A DNA stretch of 63,108 nt, filler included, from Octopus bimaculoides (GCF_001194135.2; 9 parts of 9 records of this genome joined end to end with filler, not necessarily neighbours in it); one strand, 5' to 3'. Numbered from the whole stretch's first letter, positions 12,159-12,917 are shown. The notes: generated from the letters alone by a model not told the origin. Program-made: numbers and translations.

Positions 12159-12208
<50 letters not shown>

Positions 12209-12426
12209 CAAGCAAAGTAGTTAGTTCTAACATCTCTATATGACATGTGAGCAAAAACATTACTGTAAAGTGGTGTTTGTTTCCAATTGAATATGGTTGT
12301 CTCGTAGGGAACTACGTTATTACCATTTTCTTAACCTCAAGAGAATATCTTTTCCAGTTGGTTAACAAATCAACCATGTCCAATATATTACGAGCATGGG
12401 AGCAAACCCCTACCATCTAGCGGTTT

Positions 12427-12490
12427 GACAGGACCAGTAGACCACTCTGGTTTCAGGATACTTCCCTTCCATCAGTACCGGACACCTGTC
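12427..12490 (-). ncRNA. Type I hammerhead ribozyme with a 1-nt core insertion
   Basis: Minus strand reads GACAGG UGU CCGGUA CUGAUGGA AGGG AAGUA UCCU GAAA CCA GAG UGG UC^UACUGG U CCUGUC. Stem I is 6 bp + internal loop + 6 bp, and the predicted cut is between 12440 and 12439. Confidence 0.75.
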
Positions 12491-12789
12491 TGCTAGGCAT
12501 GGAAGTCGGTCGTCGTAGCTCGCAATATATGTAGAAAAGCAAGCGATATTCAGCCGGTGATTCTGCAACAAGCACAGAAGTTAGTTTCTAAAATCTCTAT
12601 AAGAAATATAAGTAGAGACAATGCTGAAAAGTAGTGTTTGTTGCCACTTCAACATGGCTTTTCTGTACGGAACTACATTGCTACCGTTTTTTAAAACCCC
12701 AGCTATTTAACGACACAGCTGTTTAACGACACAATTTGTGGCAGATATATTGCGAGCAGGGGAGCGAAACCCCTACATTCTAGTGGTTT

Positions 12790-12852
12790 GGCAGCACCAG
12801 TAGACCACTCTGATTTCAGGATATTTCCCTTCCTCAGCACCAGACACCTGTC
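12790..12852 (-). ncRNA. Type I hammerhead ribozyme, canonical core
   Basis: Minus strand reads GACAGG UGU CUGGUG CUGAGGA AGGG AAAUA UCCU GAAA UCA GAG UGG UC^UACUGG U GCUGCC. It has the CUGANGA and GAAA core, stems I, II and III, and a GUC triplet with predicted cut between 12803 and 12802. Confidence 0.85.
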
Positions 12853-12886
12853 TGCTAGACATGGCAGTCGTTCGTTCTAGCTCGCA

Positions 12887-12917
<31 letters not shown>

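What the first reader, a model, noticed from the sequence alone, without database searches (positions are those of the whole stretch)
12207..12890. Retrozyme-like tandem repeat: two hammerhead ribozymes that would excise a 363-nt (circular) RNA
Seen in sequence: a non-coding ~360-bp unit repeated ~1.9 times, each unit carrying a type I hammerhead fold on the minus strand. Predicted GUC cuts lie at 12803/12802 and 12440/12439, which would release a 363-nt monomer. Established: metazoan non-LTR retrozymes are tandem repeats of a few hundred bp with one type I hammerhead per unit, and their transcripts are processed to circular RNAs. Inference: this is a cephalopod retrozyme family, and the partial-full-partial layout fits rolling reverse transcription of a circle. 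I cannot tell from the sequence whether this family has already been catalogued.
Basis: partly seen in the sequence, partly recalled or inferred. Interest (0 to 1): 0.92.

Follow-up and report, generated by a model that had tools for sequence, protein, structure and literature searches.

The report
Decayed hammerhead retrozyme-like tandem repeat
A non-coding 363-bp unit repeated 1.9 times carries a hammerhead self-cleaving RNA motif in each unit, which fits an old, partly degraded copy of a known class of animal mobile elements (non-LTR retrozymes), not a new kind of system.

Summary
The repeat is real. Window 12207-12890 holds 1.9 head-to-tail copies of a ~363-bp non-coding unit, 77% identical, bounded exactly by microsatellites. 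On the minus strand, unit A has a complete type I hammerhead: core CUGAGGA / GAAA / GUC, helices of 6, 4 and 4 bp, and a cut at 12803|12802. My descriptor hits only there in the window, against 0.005 hits expected by chance. Unit B keeps all 18 base pairs but has one extra nucleotide in the catalytic box (CUGAUGGA), with its cut at 12440|12439.

A covariance model built from three experimentally validated retrozyme hammerheads ranks these two sites first and second in the window (E 1.6e-4 and 0.043). Rfam's own hammerhead models find nothing, even at E<=10. The hammerhead-bearing 147 nt are better conserved than the rest of the unit (87% vs 68%).

Unit size, GC content (43.5%), lack of coding capacity and tandem layout match non-LTR retrozymes, for example the 350-390 bp mussel units. 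This locus nevertheless looks decayed and may not release a circle. I could not test other genomic copies, expression, cleavage or the cephalopod origin, because no eukaryotic DNA collection was available. Verdict: probable relic of a known kind of element, of moderate interest.

The parts
12207..12890 (-). Whole array: 1.9 tandem units of a non-coding ~363-bp repeat
   Evidence: no ORF longer than 61 codons
12528..12890 (-). Unit A, complete (363 nt on the minus strand); contains a private 16-nt duplication at 12700-12733
12207..12527 (-). Unit B, lacking the last ~39 nt of the unit and ending at the (CA)n/(TG)n microsatellite
12794..12845 (-). Hammerhead A. Helix I is 12838-12843 with 12797-12802. 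The core CUGAGGA is 12837-12831. Helix II is AGGG/UCCU. GAAA follows, then helix III AUCA/UGGU. C17 is at 12803, and the predicted cut lies between 12803 and 12802. The core is canonical.
   Evidence: descriptor hit, chance 0.005 per window; custom model 12.8 bits, E 0.043; not found by Rfam
12431..12483 (-). Hammerhead B. It has the same fold with stronger helices I and III, but an 8-nt box CUGAUGGA (one extra base). C17 is at 12440, and the predicted cut lies between 12440 and 12439.
   Evidence: relaxed descriptor; custom model 20.8 bits, E 1.6e-4; pair table; not found by Rfam
12440..12802 (-). Predicted 363-nt monomer between the two cut sites (GC 43.5%). Folded as a circle: -96.2 kcal/mol, 59% paired, z = -1.7.
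12745..12757 (-). 3' arm (GCUCGCAAUAUAU) of a 13-bp long-range stem that separates the hammerhead domain from the variable domain. It pairs with 12518-12533 in the monomer. The same arms recur at 12878-12890 and about 12382-12394.
   Evidence: one G-C to G.U change between units
12518..12533 (-). 5' arm (AUAUAUUGCGAGC) of the long-range stem
12156..12206 (.). (TG)25 microsatellite that directly abuts the 3' end of the array (RNA sense). A TG microhomology with the unit sits at the junction.
12888..12955 (.). (TATG)n(TATC)n microsatellite that directly abuts the 5' end of the array (RNA sense)

Best explanation
This is an old, partly degraded dimeric insertion of a non-LTR retrozyme. That is a non-autonomous, non-coding retroelement whose ~363-nt unit carries one type I hammerhead ribozyme.

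The inferred life cycle of the family, taken from PMC7229834 and PMC7761336 and not shown here, runs as follows. A tandem copy is transcribed on the window's minus strand. Each hammerhead cuts after its GUC. [quoted passage not shown] A reverse transcriptase from an autonomous element, most likely Penelope-like, then copies the circle or a multimer for more than one round. It integrates a greater-than-unit-length tandem cDNA, here into a microsatellite.

Shown here: the repeat, the motif and its phase, the preferential conservation of the hammerhead domain, and the microsatellite borders.

Inferred: self-cleavage, circularisation, mobilisation, and the existence of a family. At this particular locus the downstream ribozyme has a 1-nt insertion in its catalytic box and the upstream one has a weak helix I. 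The locus itself may therefore no longer yield circles.
For: (1) The tandem layout has a 361-363 bp period.

(2) Unit A satisfies the published hammerhead criterion, CUGANGA / GAAAY / RUH with perfect helix topology (supplement of PMC7229834). This is the only descriptor hit in 14.5 kb on both strands, against 0.005 expected. The same descriptor recovers the validated coral, mussel and Ax330 ribozymes. A CUGAGGA box also occurs in the validated axolotl Ax330 ribozyme.

(3) A covariance model trained only on three validated retrozyme hammerheads ranks the two predicted sites first and second in the window. Both matches are full length, with E 1.6e-4 and 0.043. The best score in 26 kb of unrelated DNA of similar composition was 13.7 bits, and that hit was a bare hairpin with the core deleted.

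(4) All 18 pairs are standard in both units. The four substitutions that fall in helices all preserve pairing, and none hits the 12 invariant core bases.

(5) The hammerhead-bearing 147 columns are 87% identical, against 68% for the rest (Fisher p 7e-5). Leaving out the badly aligned stretch gives 76% and p 0.026.

(6) Unit length, GC of 43.5% and absence of ORFs or Pfam domains match the published retrozyme features; mussel units are 350-390 bp.

(7) Helix III is a real 4-bp stem, as in retrozyme-type ribozymes, and unlike the minimal hammerheads of Penelope-like elements.

(8) Both array ends abut microsatellites to the base. This matches the microsatellite insertion bias reported for Penelope-like elements.

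(9) The array spans two intact cut-site junctions. Its template was therefore circular or multimeric, not a cleaved linear monomer.
Against: Rfam's curated hammerhead models give no match at gathering score. They also give none at E<=10, even on ~90-nt pieces.

Unit A scores only 12.8 bits with my own model, which is within the background range.

Unit B has an extra base in the catalytic box. The 10.1-11.1 pair is A-U instead of the usual G-C. Helix I of unit A is half G.U, and its hammerhead fold is worth only -2.3 kcal/mol. The validated ribozymes range from -3.9 to -12.2 kcal/mol.

RNAfold does not predict the hammerhead as the minimum-energy fold, and local z-scores are about -0.3 to -0.4. 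The same is true of the validated controls.

The circular monomer is only modestly more stable than shuffles (z -1.7), and the opposite strand scores better at z -2.8.

There are only two copies and no compensatory double changes. The descriptor would give tens to hundreds of chance hits in a multi-gigabase genome. No second locus, transcript or Penelope-like element could be examined.
Confidence: 0.62

Rival explanations
1. This is an ordinary local tandem duplication, or a minisatellite-like repeat, of non-coding DNA in a repeat-rich genome. The hammerhead-like motif arose by chance and was simply duplicated along with the unit. No ribozyme and no RNA circle are involved.
For: Rfam finds no hammerhead at all. 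The unit A score with my model is at background level. At genome scale a loose descriptor yields many chance hits: 26 in 174 Mb of shuffles. The second motif is not independent evidence, because it is a copy by descent. There is no compensatory covariation. Folding is weak. No other copy was found anywhere I could search.
Against: A chance hit that also falls inside this 684-bp repeat is expected about 2e-4 times per window, from 0.005 x 684/14540. The motif lies in the best-conserved third of the unit. All four helix substitutions keep pairing, and no invariant core base is substituted. Unit B scores 20.8 bits (E 1.6e-4) with a model trained on unrelated validated ribozymes. Unit size and GC match known retrozymes. 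The searches for other copies were uninformative, because even the window's own multi-copy SINE-like repeats have no relatives in the collections.
Confidence: 0.2
2. This is a remnant of the pseudo-LTR region of an autonomous Penelope-like element, with tandem pLTRs left after loss of the RT/GIY-YIG ORF. It is not a dedicated non-autonomous retrozyme.
For: Penelope-like elements carry type I hammerheads in their pLTRs, form partial tandems and insert into microsatellites. Retrozymes are reported to derive from pLTRs. The array is bounded by microsatellites.
Against: No RT or GIY-YIG domain, and no Pfam domain of any kind, appears in any stop-free stretch of at least 75 codons in the window. 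The units are directly adjacent with no internal ORF. Hammerheads of Penelope-like elements are minimal variants that lack helix III, whereas this one has a 4-bp helix III and a two-part helix I.
Confidence: 0.1
3. This is a dimer of a tRNA-derived SINE, similar to the Schistosoma Sm-alpha elements. Those combine a tRNA-like Pol III head with a hammerhead. The element would be transcribed from internal A/B boxes and mobilised by a LINE.
For: By eye there is an A-box-like AGAGTGG. About 40 nt downstream sits a T-arm/B-box-like AGGGGTTTCGCTCCCCT, directly followed by GCTCGCA. That sequence pairs with TGCGAGC at the start of the unit, like an acceptor stem. Sm-alpha elements are tRNA-Gln-derived, SINE-like and carry hammerheads. 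The array ends in a simple-repeat tail, (CA)n in RNA sense.
Against: ARAGORN finds no tRNA-like structure there, even at 70% of its thresholds, where it reports 37 spurious calls elsewhere in the window. Rfam's tRNA model gives nothing at E<=10. The B-box match needs an indel. Head-to-tail units that span the hammerhead cut site are not the usual SINE insertion form.
Confidence: 0.06

Closest known systems
Non-LTR retrozymes of the mussel Mytilus galloprovincialis (Cervera & de la Pena 2020, PMC7229834)
   Same: Both are possibly molluscan, though the window's taxon is unverified. Both are tandem non-coding repeats, 350-390 bp in the mussel and 363 bp here. Both have low GC, one type I hammerhead per unit with a short helix III, and loops that lack the archetypal tertiary-contact nucleotides.
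   Different: There is no detectable sequence similarity to the published mussel clone. The hammerhead differs: an A-U pair at 10.1-11.1 here against G-C in the mussel, and helix II AGGG/UCCU against GUCU/AGAC. The mussel family has ~5000 copies, proven self-cleavage and abundant circRNA. Here there is one decayed dimer with no functional data.
Amphibian satellite 2 / axolotl retrozymes (HHR_Amex1, HHR_Amex2)
   Same: Both are ~330-350-bp tandem units with a type I hammerhead. The CUGAGGA box of unit A is identical to that of the validated Ax330 ribozyme. Non-G-C pairs at the base of helix II are tolerated there: HHR_Amex2 has a U.U mismatch.
   Different: The amphibian helix III is 1-2 bp with a palindromic loop, and the ribozymes work as dimers. 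Here helix III is 4 bp with a GAG loop, which is compatible with monomeric cleavage. Copy numbers there exceed 100,000.
Schistosoma Sm-alpha / Sj-alpha SINE-like elements with hammerheads
   Same: Both are short (~335 bp) non-coding repeats with a type I hammerhead. A possible tRNA-like or Pol III-box resemblance exists.
   Different: Sm-alpha is recognisably tRNA-Gln-derived, and tRNAscan calls thousands of copies. The tRNA resemblance here is not supported by ARAGORN or Rfam.
Minimal hammerheads in pseudo-LTRs of Penelope-like elements
   Same: Both involve a type I hammerhead, tandem arrangement and insertion into microsatellites. These elements are the likely source of the mobilising reverse transcriptase.
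   Different: The hammerheads of Penelope-like elements lack helix III and loop contacts, and they flank an RT/GIY-YIG ORF. Neither is the case here.

Membership tests
Hammerhead ribozyme, type I | Invariant core CUGANGA ... GAAA ... U-H with an A15.1-U16.1 pair (published criterion CUGANGA/GAAAY/RUH) | tested here: met
   Unit A has CUGAGGA / GAAAU / GUC. It is the only hit in the window, against 0.005 expected by chance.
Hammerhead ribozyme, type I | The same invariant core in the second unit | tested here: not met
   Unit B reads CUGAUGGA, with one extra base in the 7-nt box. It is found only with a relaxed descriptor. My model treats the base as an insertion.
Hammerhead ribozyme, type I | Three-way junction with helices II and III capped and helix I open | tested here: met
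   Helix I has 6+4 bp, helix II 4 bp and helix III 4 bp. All 36 cells are standard pairs, against 25-50% in slid controls.
Hammerhead ribozyme, type I | Match to the curated Rfam covariance models (Hammerhead_1 and relatives) | tested here: not met
   No hammerhead hit at gathering score or at E<=10, on 900-nt and ~90-nt stretches.
Hammerhead ribozyme, type I | Significant match to a model built from experimentally validated retrozyme hammerheads | tested here: inconclusive
   Unit B scores 20.8 bits (E 1.6e-4) and unit A 12.8 bits (E 0.043). They rank first and second in the window. Background in 26 kb reaches 13.7 bits. The model rests on only 3 sequences, and its E-values are rough.
Hammerhead ribozyme, type I | Covariation that supports the helices | tested here: inconclusive
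   Four one-sided, pair-preserving changes and no double changes, from only two sequences.
Hammerhead ribozyme, type I | Mg2+-dependent self-cleavage after H17 | not testable with these tools
   Needs in vitro transcription of 12890-12207 (minus strand).
Non-LTR retrozyme (Cervera & de la Pena 2020) | Short tandem repeats, unit 150-450 bp, dimers to multimers | tested here: met
   363-bp unit, 1.9 copies.
Non-LTR retrozyme (Cervera & de la Pena 2020) | Low GC (<45%) and no coding capacity, LTR, PBS or PPT | tested here: met
   GC is 43.5%. The longest stop-free stretch is 61 codons. No protein relatives. No terminal repeats other than the units themselves. PBS and PPT were not searched for specifically.
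Non-LTR retrozyme (Cervera & de la Pena 2020) | A complete type I hammerhead in every unit. This is the 'active retrozyme' criterion of Li et al. 2026: a TRF-detected repeat with at least 2 consecutive complete hammerheads. | tested here: not met
   Only unit A is complete. TRF did not report the repeat.
Non-LTR retrozyme (Cervera & de la Pena 2020) | Highly self-paired circular monomer | tested here: inconclusive
   The circular minimum-energy fold is -96.2 kcal/mol, 59% paired, with z -1.7 against 300 shuffles.
Non-LTR retrozyme (Cervera & de la Pena 2020) | Multi-copy family dispersed in the genome, co-existing with Penelope-like elements | not testable with these tools
   No eukaryotic genome collection was available. 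Indirect routes were all empty. They are uninformative, because the window's own SINE-like repeats are absent from the collections too.
Non-LTR retrozyme (Cervera & de la Pena 2020) | Expression as linear and circular RNA of unit length | not testable with these tools
   Needs RNA data from the source species.
Penelope-like element (pLTR) | RT plus GIY-YIG ORF flanked by the repeats | tested here: not met
   No Pfam domain in any long stop-free stretch of the window.
Penelope-like element (pLTR) | Minimal hammerhead that lacks helix III | tested here: not met
   Helix III has 4 bp in both units.
tRNA-derived SINE (Sm-alpha-like) | Recognisable tRNA-like head with A and B boxes | tested here: not met
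   ARAGORN finds none, even at relaxed thresholds. No Rfam tRNA hit at E<=10. The resemblance is by eye only.

The most novel reading that the evidence does not exclude
Intact copies of that family would be transcribed and self-processed into ~363-nt circular RNAs. The conserved 147-nt hammerhead domain is closed by a 13-bp stem, followed by a T-arm-like hairpin and A/B-box-like motifs. It could act as an internal Pol III-type promoter or a tRNA-mimicking module, which would address the open question of how metazoan retrozymes are transcribed.
Probability: 0.25. Interest if true: 0.5.

Novelty: new member of a known kind. Interest (0 to 1): 0.35.

Why it matters
If the family exists and is active, it would extend hammerhead-driven circRNA biogenesis to another animal lineage. 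No paper in the searched library reports hammerhead ribozymes or retrozymes from octopus, squid or cuttlefish. It would also add a divergent natural hammerhead that Rfam's models miss: an A-U pair at 10.1-11.1, a G at position 7 and a 4-bp helix III. That variant would be useful for improving ribozyme models, and for annotating a class of repeats that usually stays 'unclassified' in repeat-rich genomes. As a single decayed dimer of a well-described element class, it does not change current understanding.

Tried and rejected
Rfam scans of the whole piece at gathering score, and of the region at E<=10, gave only low-complexity miRNA-like hits on the flanking microsatellites. I discard those as artefacts. 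No hammerhead, twister, HDV-like or tRNA model matched.

TRF did not detect the 363-bp period.

I looked for other copies by several routes, and all were empty:
- blastn of the array against the window;
- a word-indexed protein search with the 53-aa ORF that overlaps hammerhead B;
- an HMMER search of a concatenate of six stop-free translations against 1.84 billion representatives;
- exact look-ups of two array ORFs;
- exact pattern scans of JGI metagenome contigs (twice) and IMG/VR.

These negatives carry little weight. A translation of the window's own multi-copy SINE-like repeat also has no relative, so the source genome and its close kin appear to be absent from the gene-called collections.

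I tried to identify the organism through the neighbouring decayed ORF. Its only relatives come from an ENA assembly (ERZ21867824) and two Logan runs (SRR26065844 and SRR26065847), none with names. No paper mentions these accessions. The fetched loci hold no copy of the unit.

The tRNA-SINE idea was tested with ARAGORN at default and relaxed thresholds and was not supported.

A four-sequence alignment for the custom model misaligned the Ax330 ribozyme, so I used three sequences instead.

I replaced it with scans of all long stop-free segments.

Full report
**1. The observation**

Read on the minus strand, window 12890-12207 holds two head-to-tail copies of a non-coding unit. Direct-repeat families spaced 361-363 bp apart tile the region. 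A pairwise alignment gives a complete unit A (12890-12528, 363 nt) and a unit B (12527-12207, 321 nt) that lacks the last ~39 nt. blastn puts overall identity at 77-78% and finds no other copy in the 14.5-kb piece. TRF did not report the repeat, presumably because of this divergence.

The longest stop-free stretch inside the array, on either strand, is 61 codons. No long stop-free segment of the window matches a Pfam family. The repeat, its coordinates and its non-coding nature are therefore confirmed.

**2. The hammerheads**

Unit A (minus strand) has these parts:
- Helix I: GUCUGG... pairing with ...UACUGG.
- Core box: CUGAGGA.
- Helix II: AGGG/UCCU with loop AAAUA.
- GAAA.
- Helix III: AUCA/UGGU with loop GAG.
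- C17 at 12803.

I wrote a type I descriptor with these requirements: CUGANGA; helix II of at least 3 bp; GAAA; helix III of at least 2 bp including A15.1-U16.1; U-H; helix I of at least 4 bp. It recovers the validated coral, mussel and Ax330 ribozymes taken from the supplement of PMC7229834. In the window it hits exactly once on both strands, at C3 = 12837 and H17 = 12803.

In 1000 dinucleotide-preserving shuffles of the window the mean number of hits was 0.005. In 174 Mb of shuffles there were 26 hits, and only 3 had at least 14 paired positions like the real one.

Unit B has the same fold with better helices: A-U and C-G replace G.U pairs. Its box, however, reads CUGAUGGA, one base too many. 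It is found only with a relaxed box, with H17 at 12440.

**3. Independent scoring**

Rfam 15 reports no hammerhead at gathering thresholds over the whole piece. It reports none at E<=10 over 900 nt, or over ~90-nt pieces centred on each motif. This is a real negative, and I record it as a failed membership test.

I then built a covariance model from three experimentally validated retrozyme hammerheads: coral Amil224, mussel Mg353 and axolotl Ax353. With filters off, its two best matches in the window are the two predicted sites. Both are full length: 12431-12483(-) at 20.8 bits (E 1.6e-4) and 12794-12845(-) at 12.8 bits (E 0.043). The next match has E 0.28 and a broken core.

In 26 kb of unrelated DNA of similar composition, the best score was 13.7 bits, for a hairpin with the whole core deleted. 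Unit B therefore stands clearly above background, while unit A is marginal by score even though its core is the canonical one.

Likely reasons for the Rfam miss are the A-U pair at 10.1-11.1, the G at position 7, the longer helix III and the insertion in unit B. This explanation is my inference and was not tested.

**4. Structure conservation and energetics**

I aligned the two hammerhead segments and imposed the hammerhead structure, including a second 4-bp segment of helix I beyond an asymmetric internal loop. All 36 cells are standard pairs, against 25-50% when partners are slid. Four positions differ between units, and each change preserves pairing: G.U to A-U, U.G to C-G twice, and G-C to G.U. 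There are no double compensatory changes.

No substitution falls on the 12 invariant core bases; the only core difference is the 1-nt indel. With two sequences this is supportive but weak.

Nearest-neighbour energies of the hammerhead fold are:

| Ribozyme | Energy (kcal/mol) |
|---|---|
| Unit A | -2.3 |
| Unit B | -8.1 |
| Coral (validated) | -12.2 |
| Mussel (validated) | -6.7 |
| Ax353 (validated) | -6.6 |
| Ax330 (validated; 6% cleavage in one hour as a single motif) | -3.9 |

The minimum-energy fold is not the hammerhead in any of these sequences, controls included. A competing hairpin, CUACUGG (12803-12797) with CCACUAG (12786-12780), could sequester the 3' strand of helix I.

**5. The unit as a whole**

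The first 147 alignment columns carry the hammerhead. They are closed by a 13-bp stem, AUAUAUUGCGAGC/GCUCGCAAUAUAU, and are 87% identical between units. The remainder is 68% identical (Fisher p 7e-5). If I leave out the stretch disturbed by a 16-nt duplication private to unit A (12700-12733), the figure is 76% and p is 0.026.

If both units had been born identical in one event and then drifted neutrally, divergence should be uniform. The pattern fits better with units copied from already heterogeneous family members whose ribozyme domain was under selection. That matches what is reported for coral and mussel retrozymes.

The 363-nt monomer has 43.5% GC. Folded as a circle it gives -96.2 kcal/mol, with 59% of bases paired and z = -1.7 against 300 shuffles. 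The opposite strand gives z = -2.8. 'Highly self-paired' is therefore not clearly met.

**6. Borders and surroundings**

The array abuts (TG)25 at 12156-12206 and (TATG)n(TATC)n at 12888-12955, to the base. About 15% of the window is simple repeat in ~35 blocks. I estimate that both ends would coincide with block edges by chance at well below 1%.

There is TG microhomology at the 3' junction...TGTGTAACAAGCA in the window against TGCAACAAGCA in unit A.

Penelope-like elements are reported to prefer microsatellite targets and are the proposed mobilisers of metazoan retrozymes. No RT, GIY-YIG or transposase domain is detectable anywhere in the window.

The array spans two intact cut-site junctions. 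A cleaved linear monomer therefore cannot have been the template. A circle, a multimeric transcript, or DNA-level duplication could each have produced it.

**7. Comparison with known systems**

The defining features of non-LTR retrozymes (PMC7229834, PMC7761336) are:
- tandem units of 150-450 bp;
- GC below 45%;
- one type I hammerhead per unit;
- no LTR, PBS, PPT or ORF;
- many genomic copies;
- abundant circRNAs of unit length.

The first, second and fourth features are met here. The third is met for unit A only. The last two could not be tested.

The stricter 'active retrozyme' rule of Li, Clavereau & Pollet (2026) requires a TRF-detected repeat with at least two consecutive complete hammerheads. 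It is not met.

The hammerheads of Penelope-like elements are minimal and lack helix III, so this ribozyme is of the retrozyme type. The schistosome Sm-alpha elements combine a tRNA-derived SINE head with a hammerhead. By eye, the unit has A-box-like, T-arm-like and acceptor-like features. ARAGORN, even at 70% of its thresholds, and Rfam's tRNA model do not support them.

**8. What could not be done**

No eukaryotic DNA collection was available. All indirect routes to other copies were empty. These negatives are uninformative, because a translation of the window's own multi-copy SINE-like repeat has no relative in 5.8 billion proteins either.

The cephalopod origin is unverified. The only relatives of a neighbouring decayed ORF come from unnamed ENA and Logan assemblies.

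In the searchable literature, no paper reports hammerheads or retrozymes from octopus, squid or cuttlefish. The element class is, however, described as widespread in invertebrates, including molluscs.

**9. Verdict**

The most likely reading (about 0.6) is an old, partly degraded dimer of a non-LTR retrozyme. It would be a new member of a known kind.

The main rival (about 0.2) is a chance hammerhead-like motif in an ordinary tandem duplication. A Penelope-like pLTR remnant (about 0.1) and an Sm-alpha-like SINE (about 0.06) are less likely.

The locus itself may not release a 363-nt circle, because its downstream ribozyme is non-canonical. Interest is moderate at 0.35. The decisive tests are a genome-wide copy census with covariation analysis, in vitro cleavage, and detection of the back-junction in RNA.

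Noticed in passing
window 4244-4561, 6663-6902, 8208-8446: Four copies of a ~120-240-bp dispersed, SINE-like repeat (84-92% identical), two of them adjacent at 4244-4360 and 4361-4561. They are unrelated to the hammerhead unit.
   Followed up: partly
window 36-239, 496-627, 8012-8215: A second dispersed repeat family (80-89% identical), each copy next to TA/YI-type microsatellites. Its ORF-like translation has no relative in the 5.8-billion protein set. 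This shows that the source genome is not represented in the gene-called collections.
   Followed up: partly
window 13414-14451 (+): A decayed interspersed repeat with broken ORFs (13285-13779, 13885-14106, 14152-14403). It is 72-76% identical to an ENA metagenome-assembly contig (L001 10046-11056) and has protein relatives P0001-P0004. No Pfam family matches. The C-terminal piece looks like a DDE-transposase tail by eye only.
   Followed up: partly
window 12700-12733: A 16-nt tandem duplication (CAGCTATTTAACGACA x2.1) present only in unit A. It explains part of the low identity in the middle of the unit alignment.
   Followed up: yes
window 12745-12815 (-) and 12878-12890 (-): By eye there is an A-box-like AGAGTGG inside helix III. 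Downstream is a T-arm/B-box-like AGGGGTTTCGCTCCCCT, directly followed by GCTCGCA. That sequence pairs with TGCGAGC at the start of the unit, like a tRNA acceptor stem. ARAGORN (default and relaxed) and Rfam's tRNA model do not call it.
   Followed up: partly
window 12780-12803 (-): The hairpin CUACUGG/CCACUAG (7 bp with one C.C mismatch, kept in unit B with a U.G) overlaps the 3' strand of helix I. It would compete with the active hammerhead fold and could act as an on/off switch.
   Followed up: no
window 1-14540: Very high microsatellite load: about 35 blocks covering ~15% of the sequence. It includes recurring compound (TGTA)n-(AGAT)n arrays at 9113-9193, 9601-9728 and 8543-8655, similar to the one that borders the array.
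   Followed up: no
window 12100-12180 and 12889-12957: Rfam E-value hits to mir-297, mir-3149, mir-466 and similar models fall entirely on TA/TG/TATG microsatellites. They are far below gathering scores and are low-complexity artefacts.
   Followed up: yes
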